Virus record (IMG/VR): IMGVR_UViG_3300042868_005134
Location: 62,001 to 126,000 of that record
Reading direction: 5' to 3' (one strand)
DNA length: 64,000 bases
Shown: piece by piece, positions 24,974 through 37,443 of the stretch
How the letters are laid out: the number at the start of each line of letters is the position of its first letter
Position numbering within the stretch: the stretch's first letter is position 1
Translations under genes and position numbers: made by a program
Notes under the pieces: generated by a model
The model's input: the letters and a program-made list of their open reading frames with translations, nothing else
Told to the model about the DNA's origin: nothing
Database searches by the model: none

Positions 24974-25066
24974 CTCGATCGCAAAGACCCTGATCGCAGT
25001 GTGGGTATCTTTTTGAGTTGACTGTTTGGCTCTTTTGCAGTATAATTAGTTTTTAAGGGAGCTAAA

Positions 25067-25207
25067 ATGCAAACATACAAACAGCAACTCGACATCGCCA
25101 TGCTACAATTACAAGCATTAATTGACGAAGAATTTGAGTACAACGAAAGTATACAAGACGCTTTTAATGCGCTCGCTTGTGCGCTAGACGAAGTTGTTGC
25201 GGAATAA
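25067..25207 (+). CDS. 46-aa acidic early protein (not in ORF track)
   Basis: MQTYKQQLDIAMLQLQALIDEEFEYNESIQDAFNALACALDEVVAE; promoter plus SD GGGAGC. Confidence 0.7.
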   Translation: MQTYKQQLDIAMLQLQALIDEEFEYNESIQDAFNALACALDEVVAE

Positions 25208-25265
25208 CAACATGCGAATGCGGGGCCCGGTTGACATTTTGGCTAGACCTTGCTATAATACACAC

Positions 25266-25595
25266 ATGACAAAGACAAAACGAACAGCAAGAAGCGACAG
25301 CAACTACGTGATCTACGCTATGACTAGCGAGCGTGGGGACTCATACGTGGGCTTGACACGCAAGGGCTCAGTCACAGTGAACAAGGCAGTACTAGAGCGC
25401 TGGCGCAAGCACAAGAGCCGAGCACGTAACGAGAACCGCATGTGGGCTCTCTATGTGTATCTCAAGACTGGCGGGCTTGACATGACTTGGACGCACACTG
25501 TCATAGACGTCATACGTGGCCGCAAAGAGGCTTATGCCTACGAGCGCGAGCTGGTCAAAATGATAGAGCCCGAGCTCAACGACCAGTACTTGTAA
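25266..25595 (+). CDS. GIY-YIG-like nuclease, leaderless
   Basis: VIYAM...YVGLT...ERWRKH...E..L...P.LN; ATG begins 7 nt after TATAAT. Confidence 0.75.
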   Translation: MTKTKRTARSDSNYVIYAMTSERGDSYVGLTRKGSVTVNKAVLERWRKHKSRARNENRMWALYVYLKTGGLDMTWTHTVIDVIRGRKEAYAYERELVKMIEPELNDQYL

Positions 25596-25669
25596 AAGCC
25601 TTATGGTTGACAGGGTCTCGGAATCCTGTTATAATTAAGGCTACAGTAAACAACTAAGGAGCGAAACTT

Positions 25670-25879
25670 ATGCGTGAAATGACTAGCAAACTGATTGCAA
25701 TGATGGACGAAGGCCTCATCAGTGCAGAAGCTGTGGCAGAGATGGCCCTGGCTTACATGAGCGAAGATGACGTGGCAGAGATGATGCGAGCTAACGACAT
25801 CCTCCTGGACGAAGAAGACGAGGATGACGGACAGCCCGACGAAGCCCAGGAGTGGGAATCTTTTGACGCAGACTGCTAA
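25670..25879 (+). CDS. Acidic early hypothetical protein
   Basis: Promoter plus SD GGAGCGAA; ends DGQPDEAQEWESFDADC. Confidence 0.85.
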   Translation: MREMTSKLIAMMDEGLISAEAVAEMALAYMSEDDVAEMMRANDILLDEEDEDDGQPDEAQEWESFDADC

Positions 25880-25889
25880 GGAGATGGCT

Positions 25890-26033
25890 ATGCAAGCATG
25901 GGACGTCTTACGCAATGGCAAGATCATTGACACTGTATTCTACGACAAGGACTGTACACTGTGGTATGTGCGCCAGGGGCTCATTGAGCACGATGGCTAC
26001 CCGGTTGACATTGTAGTCCAAAAGGCAGTATAA
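25890..26033 (+). CDS. Early hypothetical protein
   Basis: MQAWDVLRNGKIIDTVFY; SD AAGGAG. Confidence 0.7.
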   Translation: MQAWDVLRNGKIIDTVFYDKDCTLWYVRQGLIEHDGYPVDIVVQKAV

Positions 26034-26061
26034 TATACACTTACACACACTAGGAGCGCAT

Positions 26062-26346
26062 ATGAAAGTCAATCACACACTGTACATCTACAAGGCAGAC
26101 AAGCGGTGCAAAAGCGGTGAACGTCTGTTGTCAACCACTGTATGGCAGAACAGAGATGCCGCTGAGATGGCTCGTGAGGTGCGTGAGTTAGAGTACCAAA
26201 CGTGGCCCAAGCGGCAGGGCTACCGCATGGAGTTTGTGCCCACAATGAAGACTGTGAAGAACTTGATGACGGGTGTGGAGATAGAGATAGCACATGACAC
26301 TCCTCGCAGTTGCGACCCATCAAGCGAACTCTACTGGAGCATGTGA
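26062..26346 (+). CDS. Early hypothetical protein
   Basis: Promoter plus GGAGCG; ends TPRSCDPSSELYWSM. Confidence 0.85.
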   Translation: MKVNHTLYIYKADKRCKSGERLLSTTVWQNRDAAEMAREVRELEYQTWPKRQGYRMEFVPTMKTVKNLMTGVEIEIAHDTPRSCDPSSELYWSM

Positions 26347-26546
26347 TGGTCAAATGGGAATGTCAGATGTTCTACAAGGACAAGCTCTATTCAGGACACT
26401 ATTGGACTGATGAGCTTAGTCTGGCCCGTGCCCGCAGAAAGGTTGCGGAATTACAACGATATCATCCTGCCATGCGATTCACATTGACTGATTGGCAAAA
26501 AGGCAGTATAATTGACTTACGCAAACAAACAAAGGAGCTGGCATGA
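26346..26546 (+). CDS. Early hypothetical protein
   Basis: TGATG coupling to the upstream gene. Confidence 0.6.
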   Translation: MVKWECQMFYKDKLYSGHYWTDELSLARARRKVAELQRYHPAMRFTLTDWQKGSIIDLRKQTKELA

Positions 26547-26923
26547 CACGCTATTACGACACACTGGCAGAATTTGAAAGAGACGGCTATGACATCATCG
26601 TGGACAAAAGCTATGAAGACCTCAACCCTCGCGACTGCTTCGACGACTCAGTCTGTGACATTGACGAGATCATCAAGGACATCGATCGCGGCCACCTCGA
26701 ATGGTTCATGCTCAGGGTCCGGGTACTGGTCGAGGGACTTGAGTTGGGCTCAGCTTACCTCGGCGGATGCTTATACGAGGACCCCCGAGAGATCCTTACT
26801 GACGGGACTGCCGAGGACTTCATTGCTGAGGCGATGGTAGAGGCCAAGAGCCAAGTGTACAGACTGAGCCGCAAGTTCACTGAGTTGAGCTATGCTGTGG
26901 ATCGTGAAGGTGTCACGGTATAA
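26543..26923 (+). CDS. Early hypothetical protein
   Basis: Promoter plus GGAGC; GSAYLGGCLY. Confidence 0.85.
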   Translation: MTRYYDTLAEFERDGYDIIVDKSYEDLNPRDCFDDSVCDIDEIIKDIDRGHLEWFMLRVRVLVEGLELGSAYLGGCLYEDPREILTDGTAEDFIAEAMVEAKSQVYRLSRKFTELSYAVDREGVTV

Positions 26924-27013
26924 CCCTGACAGCAGTAGGGTCTTTGCTTTTTGAGTTGACACTCTGCCCAAAAGGCAGTATAATAAACACTTAAACAGCA
27001 AAAAGGAAACGCA

Positions 27014-27274
27014 ATGTCTACAGTGTATAACGCAAACACAGCAAAAGCTAAAGTAATTTATTACAAAGACAAAGAGACATACAAGATTATCTTTGCTTTT
27101 AATGTACACAAAAAAGTAAAAGATAACGGGGACATTGTACACATGTTCCCTACACAAGCAAAATGCGCTTATGTAAGCGGAGATATTAACTACGAGACAC
27201 TACAAGCAGACAAAGAGCGCATTATAGAGCAAGCTAAAAAAACAATGCGCACAAACAGCGTGGAGTTTGTATAA
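27014..27274 (+). CDS. Early hypothetical protein
   Basis: Promoter plus SD AAGGAA. Confidence 0.8.
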   Translation: MSTVYNANTAKAKVIYYKDKETYKIIFAFNVHKKVKDNGDIVHMFPTQAKCAYVSGDINYETLQADKERIIEQAKKTMRTNSVEFV

Positions 27275-27365
27275 CCCTTCAGCCCGTAAGGGCTTTTTAT
27301 AGCACACTTGACATTTTGACTAGAGTGCGCTATAATAAGTTTTTAACAAGCACTAGGAGCGAACT

Positions 27366-27767
27366 ATGCAAATCTTTACTACACTACACACCGACGGCAT
27401 GGGCTATTGGAGTCGCACTGCTACAGCAGTAGACATTACCAAATTGGACTTGCAGTACATTAACAACGAGAGAGACTTCGGCGAGCTGTGTGTATACTTT
27501 ACAACAGACGAGCTGGGATGCAATTGCTGGGAAACTGAAGTTGACGGTCTCATTTACACAGACAAACTGTTTATGACTGAGCTACGTGCTTATTTGCAAA
27601 CAATTGGTTTCTCTGAAGCAGAAGCCGACGACGTTAGCTACAGCGAGCAGGGCATGCAGGGAGACGAGTACGTTAGCTGTGACGTGGGAGCTGTGTTTAT
27701 AGCGGGCTTGGAGCGTTTGGACCCTGCGCATGTTGCAGCAGTATACAAGGAGTGCGAGGATGTTTAA
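27366..27767 (+). CDS. Early hypothetical protein
   Basis: Promoter plus GGAGCGAA; GLIYTD and YSEQGMQG motifs. Confidence 0.85.
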   Translation: MQIFTTLHTDGMGYWSRTATAVDITKLDLQYINNERDFGELCVYFTTDELGCNCWETEVDGLIYTDKLFMTELRAYLQTIGFSEAEADDVSYSEQGMQGDEYVSCDVGAVFIAGLERLDPAHVAAVYKECEDV

Positions 27768-27945
27768 CGACAAGCAAAACAAACTGATGCTGGCGGCTGT
27801 CGAAGCATTACACAAAGCAGACGCATTAATGCAAGAGGCACTAGGTGCCAGCGACGAGTGCTACGACTTACACTGCGGCATCGAAAGCATGGCCGACGAC
27901 CTGCTTGAGCTTATACAAGAGAACAACCCTGCGGAGATGGAATGA
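27760..27945 (+). CDS. Early hypothetical protein
   Basis: Start MFNDKQ with SD. Confidence 0.7.
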   Translation: MFNDKQNKLMLAAVEALHKADALMQEALGASDECYDLHCGIESMADDLLELIQENNPAEME

Positions 27946-28178
27946 CACGTACACAAATAGACGAGGCACTACAGTGGGCGGGCGCTGCAGCAATCATTGC
28001 GGGCCATGTGCTTAACGCTGTAGGGCCCAGCATGTACCCCTACAATATTGCTGTGTTCGCTGTGGGCACAGTACTATTTTTGACGTGGGCCGCGCGAGTG
28101 CGCAATGTACCGCAGGCCGTTGTCAACGTTGTAGCATTGACCATTGGGCTAGTAGGGTTATACAACGCATACAGTTGA
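27942..28178 (+). CDS. Small three-TM membrane protein
   Basis: Hydrophobic; YPYNI motif. Confidence 0.75.
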   Translation: MTRTQIDEALQWAGAAAIIAGHVLNAVGPSMYPYNIAVFAVGTVLFLTWAARVRNVPQAVVNVVALTIGLVGLYNAYS

Positions 28179-28230
28179 CATTTTGGGCAGGGCCTGTTAT
28201 AATACATACATAGCAACAAAGGAGCACACG

Positions 28231-28386
28231 ATGAGAGACGTAATACTAGCAAAGCTGGCAGAGGTAGAAGACTTGCTACAGGCTGCAACGCTGGACGGCG
28301 AGAGCTTGACAGAGATGGCGTGCTTTAGCGAACTAGAAGGTGCGCTTAACACACTAGTACAAGCGGTTGACTACTACGTAGATTGA
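28231..28386 (+). CDS. Early hypothetical protein
   Basis: Start MRDVIL after promoter plus GGAGC. Confidence 0.75.
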   Translation: MRDVILAKLAEVEDLLQAATLDGESLTEMACFSELEGALNTLVQAVDYYVD

Positions 28387-28421
28387 TGCTATAATTAAGA
28401 CTTATTAACAAGGAGCGAACC

Positions 28422-28688
28422 ATGTTAGACATTAGTAAAATTGCCAAAGTGTACAGCGGCAAGCTGGGCACCTGTATGTGCGGATGCGCCGGCAAGTACA
28501 GCTACACGGCAGAAGGTGCTGTGTCAGACAACCCGGGCTATGACGTAAGCGACAGCGTGAACGAGCGCAGTGTACGCATTATCGCTGGCAAGGTCATTGG
28601 CAATGCCAATGCAGTCAACGACGGCAACTTTGTTTATGTAGAGGATGGCAATCGCATCCGTGTTGTTTATTTTAAGGAGCAAGCATGA
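28422..28688 (+). CDS. Early hypothetical protein with CMCGCAG motif
   Basis: Promoter plus GGAGCGAA. Confidence 0.85.
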   Translation: MLDISKIAKVYSGKLGTCMCGCAGKYSYTAEGAVSDNPGYDVSDSVNERSVRIIAGKVIGNANAVNDGNFVYVEDGNRIRVVYFKEQA

Positions 28689-28939
28689 AAGTATCCCAAC
28701 TCATAGAGCAGTTGCAGGACATGAATCCCGAAGCAGACGTACACTTTGCCTATAACTATGGCGACCACTGGCGTACAGAGGTAGCCCCTAGTGTAGGCCG
28801 TGTTGACGAGGGTGCAGTAGTCTACAGCGAGTACCACCGCATGGACAAGATACTTGACGCTGACGGCGACTGCGAGTTTGACGATGACGGCAATGAAGTT
28901 GTCGATGAGTCCACACGCCGCGTAGTGGTATTGAGTTGA
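28685..28939 (+). CDS. Early hypothetical protein
   Basis: MKVSQLIEQLQ..NPEADV; GGAGC. Confidence 0.8.
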   Translation: MKVSQLIEQLQDMNPEADVHFAYNYGDHWRTEVAPSVGRVDEGAVVYSEYHRMDKILDADGDCEFDDDGNEVVDESTRRVVVLS

Positions 28940-28992
28940 CATAGTGAGCAAGTGAACGTATACTATAGACTAAGTTAACAAAAGGAGCAGAG

Positions 28993-29247
28993 ATGATTAC
29001 AGCAGACACACTTGAAGCATTGACTACATACAGCCCACAGTTCCTAACTCGTGCGGCACAGAACGCAGGATACAAGGGCCCGGAGTTCAGCTCTTGTAAG
29101 TTCATTGGCATTACCAATGGTGGTCAGTTCTGCTACACTGCTGTCTTTCATGTGAAAGGCGGCACTGACAGCACAAAGATCTTCTTGTCCTATGACCATG
29201 CTGAGGACAAGGTTATTGCTGACTACCATTTGACAGAGTTGGCATAA
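28993..29247 (+). CDS. Early hypothetical protein
   Basis: Promoter plus GGAGC. Confidence 0.8.
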   Translation: MITADTLEALTTYSPQFLTRAAQNAGYKGPEFSSCKFIGITNGGQFCYTAVFHVKGGTDSTKIFLSYDHAEDKVIADYHLTELA

Positions 29248-29264
29248 GGCGTTATAATTGAAGC

Positions 29265-29440
29265 ATATTAAGTAAAAAGGTTACCTACACCGTTAGGGAC
29301 TGTAAGAGAGGAGCACAGAGGGCACTCTACGCAATCTTACAGTCCATGAAATAGGGCAATAATGCCTGGAGACGCGGCGGAGTATGTAGGAAGTAATGAC
29401 CGTCAAGGCCCGTGAGAGATGCGCTTACAGGTAGACATAG
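29265..29440 (+). ncRNA. Candidate structured ncRNA occupying a promoter cassette
   Basis: Promoter 29230-29258 with no ORF; 11-bp stem 29297-29307/29335-29345; outer stem CCTACA/TGTAGG. Confidence 0.55.
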
Positions 29441-29501
29441 ATTGACAATGGTTCCTTTTTATGTTATAATACATACATCAACAACGCAATAGGAGCGAAC
29501 T

Positions 29502-29711
29502 ATGTCAGCATTGGTAGAAGGCAAAGTGGTTAATGTTGGAGACTACGTGGGCTTTAAATCAGACATCGAGCAGTACGGCAAAATTGTAGAGATCAAACAG
29601 AGCTACATGGGTGCCAGCCTAGTACTAGAGAACGCAAGTGGCTTCTCTGGGGGCTACATAGGCGGGCAAACAATAACCACAGAGCTAGCCAGGGATTGTT
29701 GGATTGATTGA
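29502..29711 (+). CDS. Early hypothetical protein (SH3-like pattern)
   Basis: VGDYVGFKSDIEQYGKI; GGAGCGAA. Confidence 0.85.
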   Translation: MSALVEGKVVNVGDYVGFKSDIEQYGKIVEIKQSYMGASLVLENASGFSGGYIGGQTITTELARDCWID

Positions 29712-29764
29712 CACAACGCCTAATTCATTGTATAATATACACTTACACACACTAGGAGCACACA

Positions 29765-30202
29765 ATGGGAACACGAAGCACAATCGCATTGGAATTCGCA
29801 GACGGCACAGTAGAGCAAGTCTACTGCCACTGGGACGGCTATCTTGAGCACAACGGCAAAATCCTTGCTGAACACTATAGCGACCCGTTTGTTCTGCAGA
29901 AGCTGATTGACTTGGGTGATATGTCCAGCTTGGGCGAGCGCATTGGCACACAGCACGCCTTTGAAAAAGCTCCCGAAGGCGAGTGTACTTTCTACAAGCG
30001 AGATCGCAACGAAGACGGGTGCGGCAAGAAGTCGTTCGTTGACTTCCAGGACTATTTGGCTCATCACCAGTATGAGGAATACGACTACATCCTGCGCAAC
30101 ATTAACGGCAAGGCCACTTGGTTCGTATCGGATCATGACGGAGCCTATGTTGAATTGACGCAGGCTATTATGGACAAACAAGACAACGAGGCCACAGCAT
30201 GA
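29765..30202 (+). CDS. Conserved phage hypothetical protein
   Basis: MGTRS...YCHWDGY...EEYDY. Confidence 0.85.
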   Translation: MGTRSTIALEFADGTVEQVYCHWDGYLEHNGKILAEHYSDPFVLQKLIDLGDMSSLGERIGTQHAFEKAPEGECTFYKRDRNEDGCGKKSFVDFQDYLAHHQYEEYDYILRNINGKATWFVSDHDGAYVELTQAIMDKQDNEATA

Positions 30203-30255
30203 CAGGTTTCAACAGCAAACGGGCCATGGCCCAGGACAAACTTAAGGAGCAGGAT

Positions 30256-30432
30256 ATGAGCAAAATGGCAGAACTGGCATACGACATTGAGCAACTGTAC
30301 ATTGACGGCTTCAACAGTCGAGCAATCGCAGAGGAACTTGGTTGCCCACTTGAGATTGTATTGGGTGCGCTGGCTGAGATGAATGTGGAGGATGCTGAGC
30401 CCTTTGATCCTTACGCAACTGTAAACAGTTAA
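30256..30432 (+). CDS. Small HTH-like early protein
   Basis: Start MSKMAEL after AAGGAGC; SRAIAEELGCPLEIV. Confidence 0.75.
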   Translation: MSKMAELAYDIEQLYIDGFNSRAIAEELGCPLEIVLGALAEMNVEDAEPFDPYATVNS

Positions 30433-30433
30433 T

Positions 30434-30500
30434 GCCACCGTCCGGGCCACTAGGCCTTGCAACTCGCCCTGGCACTTCGCCCGGACTGTGTGGCTTTTTT
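30434..30500 (+). terminator. Long hairpin terminator with large internal insert
   Basis: GCCAC-CGTCCGGGC...GCCCGGAC-TGTGTGGC followed by TTTTTT. Confidence 0.65.
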
Positions 30501-30569
30501 ACAACACTGTGATTTGACACTTTGAGCTTTTGGTTGTATAATTAACACATAGACAGCAAGGAGCACACA

Positions 30570-30713
30570 GTGAAGATTGTAATCAAAGTACCAAAGAAGC
30601 ACAGAGAGCATTTTGTTCTCTTTGCCCAAAATACACCCTTCAAGCAAAAGGTTGTGGAGAGCAAGATCAAATACAAACGTCAACCCAAACACCGAGGCAA
30701 ACACAATGATTGA
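30570..30713 (+). CDS. 47-aa basic peptide, ArfA-like (not in ORF track)
   Basis: GTG start after promoter plus GGAGC; MKIVIKVPKKHREHFVLFAQNTPFKQKVVESKIKYKRQPKHRGKHND. Confidence 0.65.
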   Translation: MKIVIKVPKKHREHFVLFAQNTPFKQKVVESKIKYKRQPKHRGKHND

Positions 30714-30924
30714 GATCCAAGGATTTAGCCCTAAGCAAAAGGCACTGGCAGACATCATGTGGGCCATCAGCACCAAGGAAGGCGTTGATGCGTTCATCGC
30801 AACCCTGCCAAAGGCAGAGCGCCGTGAGTGCGAATTGGTTAAAGAGATGTTGGTCTTGGCCTTCCTGGACGATATTGTTAATACCCAGGAAGCTGACATG
30901 GTTATTGACAAGTTTCGTCTTTGA
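30706..30924 (+). CDS. Early hypothetical protein
   Basis: Start MIEIQGFS. Confidence 0.75.
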   Translation: MIEIQGFSPKQKALADIMWAISTKEGVDAFIATLPKAERRECELVKEMLVLAFLDDIVNTQEADMVIDKFRL

Positions 30925-30965
30925 TGTTATAATACATACTTACACACAGCAACTAGGAGCAACAC

Positions 30966-31235
30966 ATGAAAGCACTACAAGAGTTCATTGCCCAGAAGAA
31001 TCACTGGAATTCATTCTTCAAAGGCGAGCAGTATGAGATTGCCACTGCCAAAGGTCGTCAGCGTGTGGCAGACATGATTGATTCAGCTTTGAGCCCAGAG
31101 AACTTGACCTGCGATGGCGAACTGAGCCGCACAGAAGTCAATCGACGCTACAAGGAACTGATGACTGCGGCCAAGCAGTTGAAGAAGTTGGATCCTAAGG
31201 TTTCTTTCTACGAATACGATGCGGAGGTGGCATGA
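30966..31235 (+). CDS. Early hypothetical protein
   Basis: LSPENLTCDGE motif; promoter plus GGAGC. Confidence 0.85.
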   Translation: MKALQEFIAQKNHWNSFFKGEQYEIATAKGRQRVADMIDSALSPENLTCDGELSRTEVNRRYKELMTAAKQLKKLDPKVSFYEYDAEVA

Positions 31236-31408
31236 TGCCAGTGGCGTTGGAAAGCAACATCCCAATCGAAGAGCTCGAGTTGGTTCGAGCTGAGTATCGC
31301 AACAAAGGCATCAGGATCCGAGTGCGGTATCGTGGTCCTAGACATGATTGGATGCGATTGTATTGTTTGAAGCGGAACGCCCGTGCGTTCAGTGTTTATC
31401 TTAAATAA
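31232..31408 (+). CDS. 58-aa basic protein (not in ORF track)
   Basis: MMPVALESNIPIEEL...RVRYRGPR...AFSVYLK; SD GGAGG. Confidence 0.7.
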   Translation: MMPVALESNIPIEELELVRAEYRNKGIRIRVRYRGPRHDWMRLYCLKRNARAFSVYLK

Positions 31409-31417
31409 GGAGCAACT

Positions 31418-32044
31418 ATGCCTAATTGGTGCAACAACTCAGTGGTTCTAAAACACAACGACCCAGCCATGATTGAACGGGCCCGCAAGGCTTTCAATGG
31501 CGAAGGCCTGCTACAAGAGTTCATTCCAGTGCCGCAGGCTCTGCGTGACACGGTGTCAGGCAGTATGGGCGAGGACAAGCGAGAAGCACACGAAGCACAA
31601 CAAAAAGCCAATGTGGAACAGTATGGCTACGCTAACTGGTATGACTTCTGTGTCAACGAGTGGGGTACCAAGTGGGAGATTGGTGCTGATGGTAATCCAG
31701 CACAGGACATCCCGGGTGGATTGATGTTGGGCTTTGATTCAGCATGGAGTCCTCCTATTGCGGCTTACGAGAAGCTCTTGGAGATGGGCTTCGAGATCGA
31801 AGCCATGTATTACGAACCAGGCATGGCTTATGCCGGCGTCTGGGACAATGGCCACGATGACTACTACGAGTATGGTGGACTGGACAGCGCAGGCATTGCT
31901 GAAACTTTGCCCGCAGAACTAGACGAGGCCTTTGGCATTAGCGAAAGTGTCGCAGAGTGGGAAGCAGAGCAAGAAGAAGAAAACATCGACATCGATCTTG
32001 ATGGCGGGTTGAGTGCTATTAACGAACAGGAACAACAAAAATGA
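31418..32044 (+). CDS. DUF1281/YubB-like ferredoxin-fold protein
   Basis: MPNWCNN, WYDFC..WGTKW, FDSAWSPP, YYEPG. Confidence 0.8.
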   Translation: MPNWCNNSVVLKHNDPAMIERARKAFNGEGLLQEFIPVPQALRDTVSGSMGEDKREAHEAQQKANVEQYGYANWYDFCVNEWGTKWEIGADGNPAQDIPGGLMLGFDSAWSPPIAAYEKLLEMGFEIEAMYYEPGMAYAGVWDNGHDDYYEYGGLDSAGIAETLPAELDEAFGISESVAEWEAEQEEENIDIDLDGGLSAINEQEQQK

Positions 32045-32172
32045 AGACTAATCGACAACTTAACAAAGACCATGCGGGTCGCGAACTGCTTAAGGTTCGT
32101 CCCAAACAACCAGCTTGGGATTTCAAATCATTAGAGGCCGTGATTCGTCAGTGGATCACGCAGGCTAAATGA
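32041..32172 (+). CDS. 43-aa hypothetical peptide (not in ORF track)
   Basis: ATGA overlaps at both ends. Confidence 0.55.
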   Translation: MKTNRQLNKDHAGRELLKVRPKQPAWDFKSLEAVIRQWITQAK

Positions 32173-32426
32173 GCAGGCTAGCACTCTACGGTAGACCATA
32201 TGTGGTGTTCGATGCTACCAATCGAGAGCACAGACAATGGTTCGCCAACTTCAACAAGTCGGGTGCGTGGGGCAACTGTCCGGTTCGTTTTGTAGTTGAT
32301 GACGACCATGGCGATTTGATTACCATGATTCAAAGGCATTTGATCCAGTTCTATGTGGACAAAGAGTTCGCCAAGGATCGGGTGCGCCCAAAAAGTGTTG
32401 TGAAAACACAACGGAAAAAGACTTAG
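32169..32426 (+). CDS. Hypothetical protein
   Basis: RPYVVFDATNREHR...WGNCPVRF. Confidence 0.75.
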   Translation: MSRLALYGRPYVVFDATNREHRQWFANFNKSGAWGNCPVRFVVDDDHGDLITMIQRHLIQFYVDKEFAKDRVRPKSVVKTQRKKT

Positions 32427-32492
32427 GATTGAGTTGACAGGTTAGGGTTTTGGCAGTATAATTACTACTTCAACAACGCAATAGGAACTAAG

Positions 32493-32822
32493 ATGCTCGC
32501 ACTAGACAACATTGAAAGCGTACACAACATGGCTACCCAAGCGGCTGCAAAAGCCACTGAGGACTTCCTTGCCAAACACGGTGACCGAGACGCTTGTGGT
32601 TTTGCTTGGGTCACAGTCTACGAGAAGGGCTCAACCAAGTTGGGTCGCGCATTGAAGGCAGTGGGCTTCAAGCCTGCATACGGCGGCGGACTTCAGCTGT
32701 GGAATCCAAGCGGTAGCTGGACCCAGTGTATCACTGCCAAGGAAGAAGGCGCAGAGGCCTACGCAAAGGTGCTTCAGTCTTTTGGTATTGAGAAGGCTTA
32801 CGCAGGGTCCAGAATGGACTAA
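32493..32822 (+). CDS. Early hypothetical protein
   Basis: ACGFAWV...KEEGAEAYA...SRMD. Confidence 0.85.
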   Translation: MLALDNIESVHNMATQAAAKATEDFLAKHGDRDACGFAWVTVYEKGSTKLGRALKAVGFKPAYGGGLQLWNPSGSWTQCITAKEEGAEAYAKVLQSFGIEKAYAGSRMD

Positions 32823-32940
32823 ACGAATATGGTTTGGTTAGCCAAAAGACATTGACAATTGGCTAACCAGACTGTATAATAAGAACATGCTGAGAAGATA
32901 GGCTTTGAGGCATTAATTTTACACACAGAGGAAATTTAAA

Positions 32941-33297
32941 ATGGCTACAGATAAATTGTTTACGGTTGCTGGTACTTCAGCTCTCAATGGCGTGACCAAG
33001 GTGCGCTTTGCTAACGATCAGATGCGAGTCAAAGTACTTGCCAAGTCTGGTCATACAGATATCAACCTCGTCGAGCTTCCTGAAGCTATGACCAAGTTGG
33101 ACGCAGTCAAGTTCATTAAGAACCTTGATGAGTTCACCAATGTGGTTGAGCAAGTGGCAATTGCCGACTATCTGGATCGCAAGGATGAAGCTCCTGCCAA
33201 GGTTGTTGCCAAAGTCAAGACAGCTCCTGTCAAGACTAAAGCTGCTCCTAAGGCCAAGGCAGTGTCAACTGAAGGCATGGAAGACGCTCCGTTCTAA
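32941..33297 (+). CDS. Hypothetical protein with Lys/Ala-rich tail (possible nucleoid-binding protein)
   Basis: FTVAGTS..KVRFAND; PAKVVAKVKTAPVKTKAAPKAKA. Confidence 0.8.
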   Translation: MATDKLFTVAGTSALNGVTKVRFANDQMRVKVLAKSGHTDINLVELPEAMTKLDAVKFIKNLDEFTNVVEQVAIADYLDRKDEAPAKVVAKVKTAPVKTKAAPKAKAVSTEGMEDAPF

Positions 33298-33335
33298 ACT
33301 GCCGCACCGTATCGCACACTGAGATAATTACTAGT

Positions 33336-33518
33336 ATGCGATACGGTGTTTCATTTTCGGACGATTACATGGGCGGGTGCGTGGTCATCCGTGATTTCAA
33401 AAGCGAACCAGTTGGGCGGGTGCTCTGCTGTATAGTTCGTGACAATAGGTACGAAGCTGAACAAACAGCACAATACCTGTGCGATTTACTCAACAAAGAT
33501 TTAAACAATCAATCATGA
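33336..33518 (+). CDS. Hypothetical protein
   Basis: ORF coupled to the next gene. Confidence 0.55.
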   Translation: MRYGVSFSDDYMGGCVVIRDFKSEPVGRVLCCIVRDNRYEAEQTAQYLCDLLNKDLNNQS

Positions 33519-33706
33519 GCAACTGGGTTCAATACGAAGTATGGTCCGAGGATGGTAGCGGGCAATCGGAACTGATAGACACTACCGCAAGCAGAAAAGA
33601 TGCTTTAAGCATCGCAGAGCGAACACACCGAGAAACAAATGCCATTGTCACTGTCTATGAAGAGACTGTGGACGGTGATTATGAATTGATCAAAGAGTTT
33701 AGTTAA
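33515..33706 (+). CDS. Hypothetical protein
   Basis: Start MSNWVQY (ATGA overlap). Confidence 0.65.
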   Translation: MSNWVQYEVWSEDGSGQSELIDTTASRKDALSIAERTHRETNAIVTVYEETVDGDYELIKEFS

Positions 33707-33712
33707 GATATC

Positions 33713-33797
33713 GCGACTGTGGTGAAATAGGTAGACACAAGAGACTTAAAATCTCTCGCCGAAGGGTGTACCGGTTCGATTCCGGTCAGTCGCACCA
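33713..33797 (+). tRNA. tRNA-Leu(TAA)
   Basis: Cloverleaf, AGAGA-CTTAAAA-TCTCT anticodon arm, long variable arm, GGTTCGA, encoded CCA. Confidence 0.95.
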
Positions 33798-33801
33798 TTT
33801 A

Positions 33802-33879
33802 GGGCCGTTAGCTCATGTTGGTTAGAGCAGTGGACTCATAATCCATTGGTGCTGTGTTCGACTCACAGACGGCCCACCA
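33802..33879 (+). tRNA. tRNA with CAT anticodon, most likely Ile2 (lysidine)
   Basis: GGTTAGAGCAG..GACTCATAATC..TTGGT resembles the bacterial Ile2 pattern; encoded CCA. Confidence 0.88.
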
Positions 33880-33882
33880 TAT

Positions 33883-33959
<77 letters not shown>

Positions 33960-34026
33960 ATACCCATTCGGTTGACAGGGTCTTTGTTTGGTGCTATAAT
34001 ACATACATCGCAACAAGGAGCAGGAC

Positions 34027-34242
34027 ATGGGATACAAGGTAATCGCTGGCAAGGACGAAATGGACATGATGCGAGTCAAATACGGTGCTCGTCCTGGACT
34101 AGAAGGTCCTTTCAACTTCTCGGGCAGAGTGTTGTATTACTGCAACAAGGAAGGCGCCTACTACGATCCTACCACAGACTTTTTTGTAGAGGACAGCGAA
34201 ATGACCCTGATCCGTGATGGGTTTTTGAAACAGTTCGCTTGA
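34027..34242 (+). CDS. Early hypothetical protein
   Basis: GLEGPF...LYY..KEG.YYDPTTDF. Confidence 0.85.
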   Translation: MGYKVIAGKDEMDMMRVKYGARPGLEGPFNFSGRVLYYCNKEGAYYDPTTDFFVEDSEMTLIRDGFLKQFA

Positions 34243-34299
34243 CAGGTTGCCCAAATGGCAGTATAATAAACACATACACAGCAACAAGGAGCGAACCAA

Positions 34300-34617
34300 A
34301 TGGCTAAACTATTAATCACTACACAGGTTTACGAGAACTACGGTGCCCATGACTGGGACGGAGAGGGCGAGTGCCCACAGTACTGGAAAGCCAAAGGCGG
34401 CAATGACTATGTGGTCAAGAAGTTCAAAGGCAGCTCTGCTGATGCTACCTTGGCAGTCATGTGCCTGCGAGCACAGATTGAAAGCGACAACGACCACTTC
34501 CGCGAAACGGTAATCGACTTCCGCATTGTCAAGGACGACTACCTTACAGAGTTCGAGCAAAGCCAGATGGACTACGAAGGCTCCATTCGCTACCCAGCCA
34601 AGGAGCTGGCATGGTAA
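34300..34617 (+). CDS. Early hypothetical protein
   Basis: TQVYENYGAHDWDG...YWKAKGG; GGAGCGAA. Confidence 0.85.
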   Translation: MAKLLITTQVYENYGAHDWDGEGECPQYWKAKGGNDYVVKKFKGSSADATLAVMCLRAQIESDNDHFRETVIDFRIVKDDYLTEFEQSQMDYEGSIRYPAKELAW

Positions 34618-34700
34618 ATCCGGCAATCATCAACTTGGCCATTGTGCTCATGCCCGTATGGATCATGCTCGTAGCAATCATCATAGAGGAGATCATGTAA
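34611..34700 (+). CDS. 29-aa hydrophobic peptide (not in ORF track)
   Basis: MVNPAIINLAIVLMPVWIMLVAIIIEEIM; SD AAGGAGC. Confidence 0.5.
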   Translation: MVNPAIINLAIVLMPVWIMLVAIIIEEIM

Positions 34701-34885
34701 TGGATCAAACAATGCGAGTTATTCCCACAGTGGGCGAAGTGGGCTTGGACACAGAAGCCAGCCCGGGCAACGGTTCCTTCTATGTGCGTCTCTACGATGG
34801 ATCCTACGATATGTGTGGCTTTGACACCATTGAAGAAGCCTACGAAGATTTGGTTGACATCGCCAGCAATCGACAGTATAATTAA
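34700..34885 (+). CDS. Early hypothetical protein
   Basis: Start MDQTMRV, SD GAGGAG. Confidence 0.65.
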   Translation: MDQTMRVIPTVGEVGLDTEASPGNGSFYVRLYDGSYDMCGFDTIEEAYEDLVDIASNRQYN

Positions 34886-34910
34886 CACATAAACAAACAA
34901 GGAGCGAACG

Positions 34911-35150
34911 ATGTTTGATAAAGTAACATTTTATACCGTACACGGCAAAAGCTATGCGCAGAAGCATGGCAACCCATTTGACCGTGGCAGTGCCGACAGC
35001 TACTACGGTCGCCCACGTCAGCCACATCAGGGCGGTGTTGGTGGCGGCAGTGGCCCTCGCGTCACAGAGCTCACAGTGGATGAGCAGGAAGCATACCATG
35101 CGGGCTACGACTACAATGAAGCCACTGGCGACAAGAAGAATTGGTATTAA
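34911..35150 (+). CDS. Early hypothetical protein
   Basis: HGNPFDRGSADSYYGR..PH; GGAGCGAA. Confidence 0.85.
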   Translation: MFDKVTFYTVHGKSYAQKHGNPFDRGSADSYYGRPRQPHQGGVGGGSGPRVTELTVDEQEAYHAGYDYNEATGDKKNWY

Positions 35151-35193
35151 CCTTTCGGTTGACTGGGTCTTTATTTGATGCTATAATTAACAC

Positions 35194-35305
35194 AAGAAGA
35201 AGATAAAAGGTGATCCTCGTATGTAAGAACCCAGCTGAAAGGCAAAAAGGGTTGTAACCAAGGGATCCTAAGAGAGTTTGGAGACTCTGCCCATTATGTA
35301 GTTAG
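35194..35305 (+). ncRNA. Second candidate structured ncRNA in a promoter cassette
   Basis: Promoter 35159-35187 with no ORF; nested stems GATCC/GGATC, AACCC/GGGTT, GCT-GAAA-GGC, AGAGTTT/AGACTCT. Confidence 0.5.
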
Positions 35306-35366
35306 GTTGACAACTAGCCAAATTAGTTGTATAATTAACACTTACACACACTAGGGAGCGACCCAA

Positions 35367-35750
35367 ATGACTAAAGTAAATTATGACAGTTTTGCCTCGT
35401 TTGACATTAACGAGTGCTGTGACCACTTTGACAGTGAGAAGCAGAGCAACTGGAAGAAGATAAACAAGTTCATCGTGGCAGATGGACAAGAGTACGCCCA
35501 CATTATGGAGTCAGAGTTTGACTTTGAAGACACAGGTGATGGCGAGTACGAGGCCTTCCAAGCAGGCGTCAAGTATGCGCTTACCAAGATGAACATTGCC
35601 TTTGAAGCGGCCGCCATAGACCTCCAGGTATGCGAGGTGGACTTGGTAGAGAGCATGGGCTTTGTGCTGGTACGTGCTGACGACGAGCCTGAGGACTTTG
35701 TCAAACGAGTGCTCAAAAAGCCCGTCATGATGGTTGACAGCTGGGTCTAA
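35367..35750 (+). CDS. Acidic early hypothetical protein
   Basis: Promoter plus GGGAGCGA. Confidence 0.85.
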   Translation: MTKVNYDSFASFDINECCDHFDSEKQSNWKKINKFIVADGQEYAHIMESEFDFEDTGDGEYEAFQAGVKYALTKMNIAFEAAAIDLQVCEVDLVESMGFVLVRADDEPEDFVKRVLKKPVMMVDSWV

Positions 35751-35792
35751 ACGTGTTATAATAAACACTTAAACAACACACAGGAGCGACCT

Positions 35793-36086
35793 ATGCGTAC
35801 TATACAAGAGATTAACACAGCTATCATCCAAGGTGGTCTTACCAATGATGAGCTGGTCAGCGTGATTGATGCTGTTAAGTTTGCCCGTAGCCGACTGACA
35901 CAGCTGGCCAAGTACACCTTGCGGGTTGGTGACAGCGTCAAGTTTACCAGCTCAAAGACTGGCATGACCCTACAGGGCCGTGTGGAGAAGATTGCCATTA
36001 AATATGTAACTGTGCGTACAGCACAGGGCGCATGGAGAGTGCCCGCCAACATGTTGTCCAAAATGGATGACTTAGTAGCGGCTTGA
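35793..36086 (+). CDS. Early hypothetical protein with SH3/KOW-like C-terminus
   Basis: LRVGDSVKF...GRVEKIAIKYVTV...WRVPANML. Confidence 0.85.
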   Translation: MRTIQEINTAIIQGGLTNDELVSVIDAVKFARSRLTQLAKYTLRVGDSVKFTSSKTGMTLQGRVEKIAIKYVTVRTAQGAWRVPANMLSKMDDLVAA

Positions 36087-36124
36087 TAGTATAATTACTG
36101 TTTTAAACACGATTGGAGCGAACA

Positions 36125-37024
36125 ATGACAGGTAAAGCATATAAAGTTTTGAATCTAGAAACCATGAAGACCACACGTAAAGCCGCCACTGCCACAGTGA
36201 GCACACTGGAAATGGATAAAATCAACAAGGACCTCAGCAACGTCACCGACGAAGACATCATGGGCCGACTACGCGAACGGTTCAGCATCTTGGATGACAT
36301 GACCCGTGCTGTGAAAAAGGGTGATGTACGTGCCATGATTGTAACAGGCCCTCCGGGTGTGGGCAAGAGCTTTGGCGTGGAGAAAGTACTAGCCAAACAC
36401 GATGTGTTCGCCACAGTGGCACAGAACGAGAAGCTGAAGAAGTATGAAGTGGTCAAGGGCGCAATGAGTGCCATTGGCTTGTACAAGAAGCTCTACGAGT
36501 TTAGCGATAAGAAGTGTATCCTTGTATTCGATGACTGTGACAGCGTATTGTTAGACGACTTGAGTCTCAACATTCTCAAGGCCGCATTGGATTCAAGCAA
36601 GAAGCGTATGATCCATTGGAACACTGACAGTCGTTTGTTGCGTAGTGAAGGTGTGCCCAATCAGTTTGAGTTCAAGGGTGGTGCTATCTTTATTACCAAC
36701 ATCAAGTTTGAGCACGTTCGTAGCAAGAAGCTACAGGATCACTTGGCAGCACTAGAGAGCCGTTGCCATTACTTGGACCTTACCATTGATACGGATCGTG
36801 AGAAGCTGTTGCGTATCCGGCAGGTAGTCAGCGAGTGCGGCATGCTGGACGACTATGAGTTTAGCGACTTAGAGAAGGAAGTGCTCATTGACTTCATTGA
36901 TGAGAAGCAGGGCCGCTTGCGTGAGCTCAGCTTGCGCATGGTACTCAAGCTGGCAGACTTGAAGAAGAGTATGCCCGGCAACTGGCGTAGTGTAGCGGAT
37001 GTAACATGTATGCGTAGGGTCTAA
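36125..37024 (+). CDS. AAA-family P-loop ATPase, last gene of the early array
   Basis: Walker A GPPGVGKS, Walker B ILVFDDCD, IFITN, ALESR; SD GGAGCGAA. Confidence 0.9.
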   Translation: MTGKAYKVLNLETMKTTRKAATATVSTLEMDKINKDLSNVTDEDIMGRLRERFSILDDMTRAVKKGDVRAMIVTGPPGVGKSFGVEKVLAKHDVFATVAQNEKLKKYEVVKGAMSAIGLYKKLYEFSDKKCILVFDDCDSVLLDDLSLNILKAALDSSKKRMIHWNTDSRLLRSEGVPNQFEFKGGAIFITNIKFEHVRSKKLQDHLAALESRCHYLDLTIDTDREKLLRIRQVVSECGMLDDYEFSDLEKEVLIDFIDEKQGRLRELSLRMVLKLADLKKSMPGNWRSVADVTCMRRV

Positions 37025-37031
37025 CCCTACA

Positions 37032-37190
37032 TGTACAGTACAGCTAGCAGCCACTAAGAGCTGTATGCTGTACACTAACTGGCCAACGATTCGCTCCCGG
37101 TAACCAGTTCCTGGCCAGTGAGGCGCACTGGCAGACTAGTCCTGACATCATAATTCCGATTCGCTCCCGGTTGTGTCAGGACTTTTTTTT
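37032..37190 (+). ncRNA. Candidate anti-Shine-Dalgarno sRNA (multi-hairpin 3' UTR RNA ending in an intrinsic terminator)
   Basis: 15-nt repeat CGATTCGCTCCCGGT at 37087 and 37157, each in a hairpin loop; terminator stem 37138-37147/37174-37183 plus T8. Confidence 0.7.
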
Positions 37191-37443
37191 GAGTCGAGTG
37201 ATGACTCGGTCGGGAATATAAAAATAAAAACTATTCTCGAGGGGGTCGGGGCTTATAATATTATATGTAATACTGTAGTTATAAGCCCTTAGTGGTTGTA
37301 AATCACCACCCAGAAAGCATAAGTACTTCTTTTAAAATTTTCGTGACAGAGATTTTTTACCCTACAGGACCCATTTGGACTGTGCGAATTCATCGTGTGT
37401 GTTTCAAACCTCTACTGCGAAGCAGTGCGCTAGAGCGTAGCTA

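What the first reader, a model, noticed from the sequence alone, without database searches (positions are those of the whole stretch)
37032..37190. Candidate anti-Shine-Dalgarno sRNA complementary to the shared RBS of the whole early gene array
Seen: right after the last early gene (AAA ATPase) is a four-hairpin RNA ending in an intrinsic terminator (stem 37138-37147/37174-37183, T8). It carries a 15-nt repeat CGATTCGCTCCCGGT (37087, 37157), each copy placing ATTCGCTCC in a hairpin loop. TTCGCTCC is the exact reverse complement of GGAGCGAA, the RBS of early genes at 25658, 27356, 28412, 29492, 34288, 34901 and 36115. Shorter matches are GGAGCGA (35355, 35783), GGAGCG (26053) and GGAGC (25058, 26534, 28221, 28676, 28984, 29755, 30246, 30560, 30956, 31409, 34017). 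Established: the 16S anti-SD pairs with AGGAGG, so the consistent C after GGAG and the GAA extension are not explained by ribosome pairing, and loop-displayed C-rich seeds that block SDs are a known bacterial sRNA mechanism. Inference: a 3'-UTR-derived phage RNA accumulates during early transcription and represses translation of about 20 early mRNAs, including its own host gene, acting as a timer or feedback switch. I know of no described phage system like this.
Basis: partly seen in the sequence, partly recalled or inferred. Interest (0 to 1): 0.95.

Follow-up and report, generated by a model that had tools for sequence, protein, structure and literature searches.

The report
Phage RNA loops complementary to ribosome-binding sites
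Right after the last early gene, this uncultured freshwater jumbo phage encodes a four-hairpin RNA whose two invariant loops are the exact complement of the unusual ribosome-binding sequence on its early genes, and both partners are kept in over 80 related phage contigs, so the phage probably uses this RNA to control its own translation.

Summary
Window 37038-37191 folds into four hairpins ending in a T8 terminator. Two of them display the 9-nt loop AUUCGCUCC, the reverse complement of GGAGCGAA(U), which is the ribosome-binding site (RBS) of seven early genes.

All roughly 80 related loci (ATPase 71-100% identical) carry 2-3 such loops. Stems covary freely, while UCGCUC never varies in 102 distinct loops. 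Across 597 distinct early promoter-leader-RBS cassettes, GGAG is followed by C in 92% (never G), then G in 71%, and GGAGCGAA occurs in about 42%.

Two outgroups (PA5oct and a 59%-identical ATPase locus) lack both features. Rfam 15 and the isolated-phage collection have no match.

- Pairing between loop and RBS is the best explanation.
- In this window only about ten early genes match by 6 nt or more.
- In related genomes the strongest matches (14-17 nt) are leaders of a few late genes.
- One subclade keeps the loops but mostly lacks the CGAA extension.
- RNA accumulation and repression are untested.

This is a new variant of a known kind: loop-displayed anti-Shine-Dalgarno RNAs such as S. aureus RNAIII, and phage P1 c4 RNA.

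The parts
36125..37024 (+). Last early gene, an AAA ATPase (T4 nrdC.10-like, phrog_1250). Its own RBS is GGAGCGAA at 36115.
   Evidence: The ATG at 36125 follows GGAGCGAAca.
37038..37073 (+). Hairpin 1 (-17.5 kcal/mol), loop CCACUAAGAG. Related hairpins with GCC(R)(Y)UAAGAGC occur in many relatives.
37077..37109 (+). Hairpin 2. A 6-bp outer stem, internal loops CCAA / GUAA and a 2-bp inner stem present the loop.
   Evidence: Alignment A2: 17 distinct homologous hairpins, all 6 outer pairs change on both sides.
37089..37097 (+). Loop 1, AUUCGCUCC (anti-RBS seed), inside 15-mer copy 1 (37087-37101).
   Evidence: (P unpaired 0.92).
37111..37134 (+). Hairpin 3 (-12.2 kcal/mol). This is a variable module; relatives have other hairpins here.
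37138..37183 (+). Hairpin 4, the intrinsic terminator stem: 11-bp outer stem, 5' internal loop UCAUAAU, inner stem CCG/CGG.
   Evidence: Alignment A1: 20 distinct homologous hairpins, all 9 outer pairs change on both sides.
37159..37167 (+). Loop 2, AUUCGCUCC, inside 15-mer copy 2 (37157-37171).
   Evidence: (P unpaired 0.96).
37184..37191 (+). T8 tract of the terminator.
25658..25665 (+). Early RBS GGAGCGAA (start codon at 25670).
27356..27363 (+). Early RBS GGAGCGAA (start codon at 27366).
28412..28419 (+). Early RBS GGAGCGAA (start codon at 28422).
29492..29499 (+). Early RBS GGAGCGAA (start codon at 29502).
34288..34295 (+). Early RBS GGAGCGAA (start codon at 34300).
34901..34908 (+). Early RBS GGAGCGAA (start codon at 34911).
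36115..36122 (+). Early RBS GGAGCGAA of the ATPase gene.
35354..35361 (+). Early RBS GGGAGCGA (start codon at 35367). Strongest predicted duplex with the loop, -17.1 kcal/mol.
35783..35789 (+). Early RBS GGAGCGA (start codon at 35793).
25018..36095 (+). Early gene array: about 24 consensus sigma-70 promoters (TTGACA-17-TATAAT), each followed by an A/C-rich leader of about 20 nt, (A)AGGAGC and a start codon.

Best explanation
Window 37038-37191 is the conserved 3' end of the last early transcription unit. Several strong early promoters with no intervening terminator feed into it, so it is a 3'-UTR-type RNA. It folds into four hairpins. Two of them hold the invariant 9-nt loop AUUCGCUCC open on covarying stems, and the last is also the intrinsic terminator.

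The loop is an anti-RBS seed. It base-pairs with the family-specific extended Shine-Dalgarno element (A)GGAGCGAA on phage mRNAs, covering the site where the 30S subunit must bind and so lowering translation. Duplex-directed cleavage may follow. In this window the candidate targets are about ten early mRNAs, including the ATPase mRNA that carries the loops. In related genomes they also include a few late mRNAs whose leaders match 14-17 nt.

Because the structured 3' fragment should outlive the mRNA bodies, the expected effect is a delayed, dose-dependent brake on the mRNAs that carry the matching RBS.

Shown here: the structure, its conservation and covariation, the complementarity, the conservation of both partners, and their joint absence from outgroups.
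Inferred: that the RNA accumulates, that the pairing happens in the cell, and that the effect is repression.
For: Structure:
- The fold has a z-score of -2.85 and the loops are unpaired with P 0.92-0.96.
- 119 distinct hairpins around the motif were found in relatives.
- In MFE folds the core is unpaired and enclosed in 94 of 152 instances, against 9 of 152 with shuffled flanks.
- Outer stems show changes on both sides at every pair, while the loop is invariant.
- The inner stem covaries: CCG/CGG, GUG/CAC, CUG/CAG, GCG/CGC.

Seed conservation:
- Of 102 distinct stem-closed loops, 92 are AUUCGCUCC.
- Only positions 1, 2 and 9 ever change, and the position-9 change (C to U) still allows a wobble pair. 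UCGCUC is invariant.
- A scaffold scan that left the loop free recovered 27 canonical loops and 2 near-variants.

Target side:
- In 597 distinct early cassettes, +4 is C in 92% and never G. +5 is G in 71%, although these leaders are otherwise G-poor.
- The contiguous match to the loop complement is exactly 8 nt in 254 cassettes.
- Of 684 cassettes, 330 contain GAGCGA and none contains GGAGG.
- The minority form GGAGAGCGA keeps GAGCGA, the complement of the invariant loop core.

The conservation gradient along the RBS mirrors the gradient along the loop.

Energetics and specificity:
- Early start regions pair better with the loop than other genes do: -11.8 against -6.5 kcal/mol, Mann-Whitney p = 5e-7.
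- They also pair better with the loop than with an E. coli-type anti-SD (-8.35).

Self-avoidance:
- The ~100-aa early gene that carries the loop directly after its stop codon in other lineages has no GGAGC RBS in 25 of 25 distinct loci. Its neighbours do have it.

Strong targets in the same genome:
- Three contigs of 266-353 kb carry both the loops and late leaders that are 14-16 nt complementary to them.

Phyletic profile:
- Both features are absent from PA5oct and from L420.
Against: - No expression data exist, and no isolate carries the element.
- In the window only 7 RBSs match over 8 nt. Twelve match only over GGAGC, which any CUCC-containing loop would pair with.
- The A's at +6 and +7 are only slightly above the A-rich background of the leaders.
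- All seven full matches are promoter-proximal, so shared ancestry of promoter-leader cassettes could contribute.
- Subclade L416/L418/L419 keeps the loops but mostly has GGAGCA-type RBSs. The share of GGAGCGAA per locus ranges from 0 to about 80%.
- No true compensatory change (loop variant matched by an RBS variant) was found, because both sides are almost invariant.
- The ATPase gene does not avoid the motif.
- A 9-nt hairpin loop can rarely pair over all its bases without strain.
- The host is unknown, so its 16S 3' end could not be read.
Confidence: 0.5

Rival explanations
1. The RNA exists and pairs as described, but its principal targets are a small set of late mRNAs whose leaders are 14-17 nt complementary to loop plus inner stem. 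These encode a CsgF-like secreted protein, a 93-aa membrane protein, a DUF4337 membrane protein and others. The early RNA would hold back envelope-active late proteins until early transcription stops, or until abundant late leaders titrate it. The 8-nt match to early RBSs would be secondary.
For: - 80 IMG/VR stretches carry TAAATA-N5-20-CCGGGAGCGAATCG, and many of them have a start codon 0-3 nt after the motif.
- TAAATA precedes terminase, tail tube and a virion protein in the window, so it marks late promoters.
- Loops and leaders occur on the same contig in three large genomes.
- In one subclade a TAAATAC lies on the opposite strand directly beside loop 1. A late antisense transcript could start there, and no ORF follows it.
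Against: - None lies in the window.
- This reading does not explain why hundreds of unrelated early genes keep GGAGCG.
- The loci were collected by exact match to the 15-mer, so conservation of the leader flanks is partly built in.
Confidence: 0.17
2. The loops act in cis. They pair with an RBS on the same long early transcript, closing the mRNA on itself to stabilise it or to autoregulate the upstream gene. No free trans-acting RNA would be involved.
For: - The element has no promoter of its own and sits at the end of mRNAs that carry several matching RBSs.
- The ATPase RBS is GGAGCGA(A/C) in most loci.
Against: - The ~100-aa gene that carries the loop immediately after its stop codon never has a matching RBS (0 of 25). 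That is the opposite of what a cis 5'-3' pairing model predicts.
- Two or three loops per transcript face up to seven RBSs.
Confidence: 0.08
3. The two conserved motifs are unrelated in function. CG after GGAG would be kept for another reason. One candidate is escape from a RegB-like nuclease, which in T4 needs GGAG followed by an A-rich, C-free stretch. Another is inheritance and homogenisation of mobile promoter-leader-RBS cassettes. The loops would bind a protein or serve only in termination.
For: - T4 RegB/S1 sites exclude C downstream of GGAG (PMC1702504), so a C at +4 would confer resistance.
- The full 8-nt motif is confined to promoter-proximal cassettes in the window.
- The conserved unpaired flanks (UAAAU; CCAA/YAA) suggest a protein contact.
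Against: - An exact 8-nt reverse complement between two independently conserved elements has a chance of about 3e-5 for a random 9-nt loop. Even if CUCC is taken as given, it is about 0.004.
- RegB avoidance explains the C but not the G at +5 (71% in G-poor leaders).
- The leader between the -10 element and the SD is not conserved in sequence, so simple cassette copying does not explain the punctate conservation.
- Both features are lost together in the outgroups.
- The variable positions of loop and RBS correspond.
Confidence: 0.1
4. The 15-bp sequence is a double-stranded DNA site for a phage DNA-binding protein (operator or iteron-like), used in either orientation.
For: - The same 15-mer occurs in both orientations relative to transcription.
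- It has a partly palindromic frame, CCG...CGG.
Against: - In the loop orientation it is always embedded in hairpins with covarying stems, and often followed by a T tract.
- In the other orientation it sits at SD distance from start codons.
- Spacing between copies is not constant: 44-102 bp.
Confidence: 0.03

Closest known systems
Staphylococcus aureus RNAIII and other sRNAs with C-rich loops (RsaE/RoxS, mycobacterial 6C)
   Same: - Several hairpins each display a C-rich loop that pairs with the Shine-Dalgarno region of several mRNAs.
- In RNAIII the terminator hairpin (hairpin 14) is one of the loop carriers.
- The outcome is translational arrest plus degradation (PMC2837412, PMC6486639, PMC2790875; found).
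   Different: - Those RNAs are bacterial genes with their own promoters, and they target ordinary host SDs.
- Here the RNA is phage-encoded at an operon's 3' end.
- The target is a phage-private extended SD (GGAGCGAA) shared by a large share of an expression class.
- There is no sequence or Rfam relationship.
Phage P1/P7 c4 antisense RNA (and P22 sar, P4 CI RNA)
   Same: A phage-encoded small RNA, made from the same operon as its targets, whose exposed loop sequences pair with target mRNA and block expression. PMC8198154 describes c4 as an antisense RNA needed to repress ant. That it acts at the icd ribosome-binding site through two loops is from my own knowledge.
   Different: - c4 has one target region in one immunity operon of a temperate phage.
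- Here dozens of unrelated genes of a lytic-type jumbo phage share the complementary site.
- No match to the Rfam C4 family or any other family was found.
T4 RegB endoribonuclease
   Same: It inactivates early phage mRNAs by acting at the GGAG of their Shine-Dalgarno sequences, giving class-specific translational shut-off (PMC1702504).
   Different: - RegB is a protein nuclease helped by ribosomal protein S1, and its site is GGAG plus an A-rich, C-free stretch.
- The RBSs here have C directly after GGAG, and the candidate effector is an RNA.
- No RegB-like domain was seen in the ten early proteins scanned.
3'-UTR-derived sRNAs of enterobacteria (e.g. CpxQ, DapZ; from my own knowledge)
   Same: The regulatory RNA shares the terminator of an mRNA, has no promoter of its own, and carries a conserved seed upstream of a long U tail.
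   Different: - Those are host RNAs that depend on Hfq and RNase E.
- Processing and chaperone use are unknown here.

Membership tests
Trans-acting anti-SD sRNA with loop-displayed seed (RNAIII-like mode of action) | Stable stem-loops ending in an intrinsic terminator | tested here: met
   Four hairpins, z = -2.85, 11-bp terminator stem plus T8.
Trans-acting anti-SD sRNA with loop-displayed seed (RNAIII-like mode of action) | Seed is single-stranded and more conserved than the stems that carry it | tested here: met
   P unpaired 0.92-0.96. 92 of 102 loops are identical and UCGCUC is invariant. Every outer-stem pair changes on both sides (those sets were selected for pairing).
Trans-acting anti-SD sRNA with loop-displayed seed (RNAIII-like mode of action) | Seed complementary to the SD region of several mRNAs | tested here: met
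   Seven 8-nt matches, two 7-nt and one 6-nt at early RBSs in the window. In relatives, 254 of 597 early cassettes match over exactly 8 nt and late leaders match over 14-17 nt.
Trans-acting anti-SD sRNA with loop-displayed seed (RNAIII-like mode of action) | Compensatory co-variation between seed and targets | tested here: inconclusive
   Both sides are nearly invariant. Loops vary only at positions facing the weakly conserved RBS positions. Loci with variant loops still have standard RBSs.
Trans-acting anti-SD sRNA with loop-displayed seed (RNAIII-like mode of action) | An RNA of that size accumulates and lowers translation of its targets | not testable with these tools
   No isolate or expression data are available.
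3'-UTR-derived sRNA | Lies between a stop codon and the mRNA's own terminator, with no separate promoter | tested here: met
   ATPase stop codon at 37022-37024, terminator at 37138-37191. No +-strand promoter-like site lies between the promoter at 36067-36095 and the element.
3'-UTR-derived sRNA | Released from the mRNA by processing | not testable with these tools
   Needs 5'-end mapping.
Any Rfam 15 family (including phage C4 RNA, tRNA, known terminator-associated motifs) | Score at or above the family gathering threshold | tested here: not met
   In the whole window only three tRNAs pass. In a permissive scan of 36950-37500 the best hit is anti-hemB at 19.8 bits against a 49.5-bit threshold. 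ARAGORN finds no tRNA there.
T4 RegB/S1 cleavage site | GGAG followed by 7 A-rich nt from which C is excluded (PMC1702504) | tested here: not met
   C follows GGAG in 92% of 597 cassettes.
Canonical extended Shine-Dalgarno (pairing with a 16S tail of the ...GAUCACCUCCUUA type) | Bases after GGAG continue the complement (G, U, G...) | tested here: not met
   G never follows GGAG (0 of 597). The duplex with an E. coli-type tail is weaker than with the loop. The host's own 16S could not be read.

The most novel reading that the evidence does not exclude
The family has evolved a private translation code. An extended SD (GGAG-CGA-AUC) is read in competition by the host ribosome and by a phage RNA whose loop (GAU-UCG-CUCC) looks like the 16S anti-SD (GAU-CAC-CUCC) with its three central bases swapped. 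As this decoy accumulates it would withdraw the whole SD-led early class from translation. Ribosomes would then be left to the late genes, many of which look leaderless (TAAATA or TATAAT 5-7 nt before the ATG). That would be a phage-encoded, RNA-based switch between two modes of translation initiation.
Probability: 0.12. Interest if true: 0.92.

Novelty: new variant of a known kind. Interest (0 to 1): 0.78.

Why it matters
If the pairing is functional, a lytic jumbo phage would be marking a whole temporal class of its genes with a private extension of the Shine-Dalgarno sequence. It would then control that class with one small RNA made from the end of the same class of transcripts.

That would be a regulon-scale RNA counterpart of what T4 does with the proteins RegB and RegA. 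It would also be a natural example of an SD/anti-SD pair that differs from the host's.

The system is directly testable, because both partners are short and defined and should work with reporters in a laboratory strain. It also defines a new, widespread RNA motif in freshwater phage metagenomes: 119 distinct hairpins were collected here, and none matches Rfam 15.

Tried and rejected
- Known RNA family. Rfam gathering and permissive scans and ARAGORN found nothing at the site. The 15-mer is 12/15 identical to the T-arm of the phage tRNA-Leu, but position 58 of a T-loop is not kept and no tRNA model fits, so this was rejected.
- Host rRNA origin of the 15-mer. The genome-contig scan gave scattered single hits across all phyla. 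That is the chance level for 596 Gb (about 1,100 expected), not an rRNA pattern. The test used the 15-mer, so it does not exclude a 16S tail carrying only UUCGCUCC.
- Small ORF on the minus strand (35 codons from 37146). Stems covary and lengths differ in relatives, so no reading frame is conserved. Rejected.
- Isolated relatives. There is no DNA match in the isolated-phage collection. The nearest isolates are PA5oct-like phages (TerL 55.6%, ATPase 48%), and they lack both the loops and the RBS motif.
- Search for loop variants with matching RBS variants. Rare variants exist: AAU.., ACU....CUCU, GUU.., CUU... The neighbouring RBSs are still standard, so this test is uninformative.
- The ~100-aa protein next to the loop in other lineages, as a possible RNA partner. 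It has no Pfam or PHROG match and no sequence match to solved structures. The AlphaFold model has pLDDT 66 and finds no structural match in the PDB. This led nowhere.
- Ten early proteins scanned against Pfam for RegB-, Hfq- or ProQ-like domains. Nothing relevant was found.
- Literature. There are no papers combining phage, small RNA, anti-Shine-Dalgarno and early genes. GGAGCGAA as a text string gave only primers. The 'moraphage' aquatic jumbo lineage has predicted Bacteroidota hosts and appears unrelated.
- Additional copies in the window. None was found with up to 2 mismatches.

Full report
**What is in the window**

The window is part of a 383-kb uncultured viral contig, IMGVR_UViG_3300042868_005134 (L002). 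GC content is 42.6%. There is no nucleotide match among isolated phages. The nearest isolates are PA5oct-like jumbo phages of Pseudomonas (terminase 55.6%, ATPase 48% identical).

Bases 25,000-37,000 on the + strand form an early-gene array. About 24 consensus sigma-70 promoters (TTGACA-17-TATAAT) are each followed by an A/C-rich leader of about 20 nt, an SD and a small ORF. The array ends with an AAA ATPase gene (36125-37024). The flanking minus-strand genes include a helicase, the large terminase subunit, tail tube and virion proteins.

- The 15-mer CGATTCGCTCCCGGT occurs exactly at 37087 and 37157.
- The RNA fold gives four hairpins (37038-37073, 37077-37109, 37111-37134, 37138-37183) followed by T8, with an energy z-score of -2.85.
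- Each 15-mer forms a 2-3-bp inner stem closing the 9-nt loop AUUCGCUCC, which is unpaired with probability 0.92 and 0.96.
- GGAGCGAA, the reverse complement of loop bases 2-9, lies at seven early RBSs and at only one other + strand site.
- All 22 GGAG-type early RBSs read GGAGC. Among 49 other genes in the window, one has GGAGC and none has GAGCGA.

**Comparative evidence for the RNA**

A protein-guided search returned 80 loci with ATPase homologues of 71-100% identity. Every one whose downstream sequence is present carries one to three copies of TTCGCTCC within about 200 nt of the stop codon. In most loci the last copy lies in the loop of a T-tract terminator; L012 and L416 are exceptions.

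- I extracted 119 distinct hairpins with outer stems of 5 bp or more.
- In two fixed-geometry subsets (20 and 17 sequences), every outer-stem pair shows changes on both sides while the loop is invariant. These subsets were selected for pairing, so the evidence lies in the diversity of the stems, not in the 100% pairing.
- In MFE folds of 152 distinct instances, the core is unpaired and enclosed in 94, against 9 when the flanks are shuffled.
- The inner stem covaries: CCG/CGG, GUG/CAC, CUG/CAG, GCG/CGC.
- Among 102 distinct stem-closed loops, 92 are AUUCGCUCC. Variation is confined to positions 1, 2 and 9, and UCGCUC never changes.
- A scan that fixed the scaffold but left the nine loop bases free found 27 canonical loops, two near-variants and otherwise unrelated chance hits.

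The same loop also occurs in a second setting. It sits immediately after the stop codon of a conserved ~100-aa early protein, upstream of a separate terminator. The window's own copy of that gene (32941-33297) has a plain terminator instead.

**Comparative evidence for the RBS**

In 597 distinct early cassettes from the relatives, aligned at GGAG:
- position -1 is A in 92%;
- +4 is C in 92% and never G;
- +5 is G in 71%, although G is otherwise 1-14% in these leaders;
- +6 and +7 are A in 66-67%, only modestly above the A-rich background.

The contiguous match to the loop complement is exactly 8 nt in 254 cassettes and 9 nt or more in only 6. With a looser cassette definition, 330 of 684 contain GAGCGA and none contains GGAGG. 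The minority form GGAGAGCGA keeps GAGCGA, the complement of the invariant loop core. So the gradient of conservation along the RBS mirrors that along the loop.

Predicted duplexes between the loop and early start regions average -11.8 kcal/mol. Other genes in the window average -6.5 (p = 5e-7). The same early regions against an E. coli-type anti-SD tail average -8.35.

**Three further observations**

1. The ~100-aa gene that carries the loop in its own 3' UTR never has a GGAGC RBS (0 of 25 distinct loci), although its neighbours do. This fits a gene that must escape the loop and argues against a simple cis 5'-3' pairing model. The ATPase gene, however, does carry GGAGCGA in most loci.

2. Related genomes contain late-type leaders of the form TAAATA-N5-20-CCGGGAGCGAAUCG(G), many followed within 0-3 nt by a start codon (80 stretches).
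   - These are complementary to loop plus inner stem over 14-17 nt.
   - They precede a few gene families: a CsgF-like secreted protein, a 93-aa membrane protein, a DUF4337 protein and others.
   - TAAATA is the late-promoter signature here, because it lies 5 nt before the start codons of terminase, tail tube and a virion protein in the window.
   - Three contigs of 266-353 kb carry both loops and such leaders.

3. Two outgroups lack both the loops and the RBS extension: PA5oct and a locus whose ATPase is 59% identical.

- In the window only ten early RBSs match over 6 nt or more.
- All full matches are promoter-proximal, so cassette ancestry may contribute.
- Subclade L416/L418/L419 keeps the loops, but only 3 of 28 cassettes have GGAGCGA. 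Across loci the share of GGAGCGAA ranges from 0 to about 80%.
- No compensatory change between loop and RBS could be found.
- The C after GGAG has a possible alternative reason. T4 RegB/S1 sites need GGAG followed by an A-rich stretch from which C is excluded (PMC1702504). That does not explain the G at +5.
- The host is unknown, so its 16S tail was not examined. The 15-mer itself is not an rRNA sequence.

**Most likely mechanism**

The element is a 3'-UTR-type RNA made from the last early transcription unit. Its two loops are an anti-RBS seed that pairs with (A)GGAGCGAA on phage mRNAs and blocks 30S binding.

- Shown: structure, conservation, complementarity, and co-occurrence of the two partners.
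- Inferred: accumulation of the RNA, pairing in vivo, and the direction of the effect.

I put 0.5 on this reading. The rivals are: the variant in which a few late leaders are the main targets, 0.17; unrelated functions of the two motifs, 0.10; cis action, 0.08; a DNA-level protein site, 0.03.

**Comparison with known systems**

It works like the C-rich-loop sRNAs of Gram-positive bacteria. The closest parallel is S. aureus RNAIII, where the terminator hairpin also carries an anti-SD loop (PMC2837412). It also resembles phage P1 c4 antisense RNA (PMC8198154). It would achieve what T4 RegB achieves with a protein.

It is not a member of any Rfam family. What is new is the scale and the coding. 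A phage-private SD extension is shared by a large fraction of an expression class across a whole phage family, and it is matched by an invariant loop in the terminator region of that class.

Noticed in passing
window 37195-37450: The non-coding block after the terminator is also conserved in the ATPase-locus relatives. It contains GGGGTCGGGGCTTATAAT, a hairpin GTGGTnnTAAATCACCAC, and AAGTACTTC followed by a T-rich run. It has no Rfam hit and no match in isolated phages, and its function is unknown (promoter, origin or another RNA).
   Followed up: partly
window minus strand: starts at 58269, 56665, 62321, 19104; and 12038, 42774, 44806, 51562: Many late and middle genes look leaderless or nearly so. 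TAAATA lies 5-7 nt before the ATG of terminase, a virion protein, tail tube and a peptidase. TATAAT-like -10 elements lie 6-7 nt before the ATG of four other genes, including the DnaB-like helicase. Early genes, by contrast, have strong SDs, so the mode of translation initiation differs by temporal class.
   Followed up: partly
window 25018-36095: There is an unusually dense array of about 24 sigma-70 promoters, 19 of them perfect 12/12 consensus matches. One precedes almost every small early gene, sometimes after a short terminator hairpin. This recalls the promoter-early stem-loop cassettes of T4-type phages (from my own knowledge).
   Followed up: partly
window 32941-33297 (and L318-L362): A conserved ~100-aa early protein (MATDK.FAVAGVS...) of unknown fold has a long structured 5' leader and a non-GGAGC RBS. 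In other lineages the anti-RBS loop sits directly after its stop codon. The AlphaFold model (pLDDT 66) has no structural match in the PDB.
   Followed up: yes
L005-L011, L013-L016, L019, L027, L032, L071 (about 50-100 nt after the ATPase stop): In one subclade the first loop is followed by GTATTTAGC. On the opposite strand this reads TAAATAC-N4-5-CCGGGAGCGAAUCGG, a late-type promoter plus leader pointing antisense into the ATPase gene. No ORF follows it, so a late antisense RNA may start there.
   Followed up: partly
L364, L371, L376, L405: Some late leaders carry the motif twice: TAAATA..CCGGGAGCGAATCGG, then GGAGCGAA (GGGGAGCGAA in L376) as the actual RBS a few bases further on, just before the ATG. 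The first copy is therefore a 5'-terminal element rather than the SD itself.
   Followed up: no
window 33713-33959: Three tRNA genes, Leu(TAA), Met(CAT) and Arg(TCT), lie inside the early region. The 15-mer of the finding is 12/15 identical to the T-arm of the tRNA-Leu (33772-33786).
   Followed up: partly
window 37051-37058 and 37288-37295: The loop of hairpin 1 (CCACUAAG) is the exact complement of CUUAGUGG in the conserved downstream block. This pairing is not consistently kept in relatives, so it may be chance.
   Followed up: no
window 37850-38485: The first sizeable gene after the non-coding block encodes a 211-aa protein with a P-loop-like GAPGSKWS near its N-terminus. It has no Pfam or PHROG match.
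   Followed up: no
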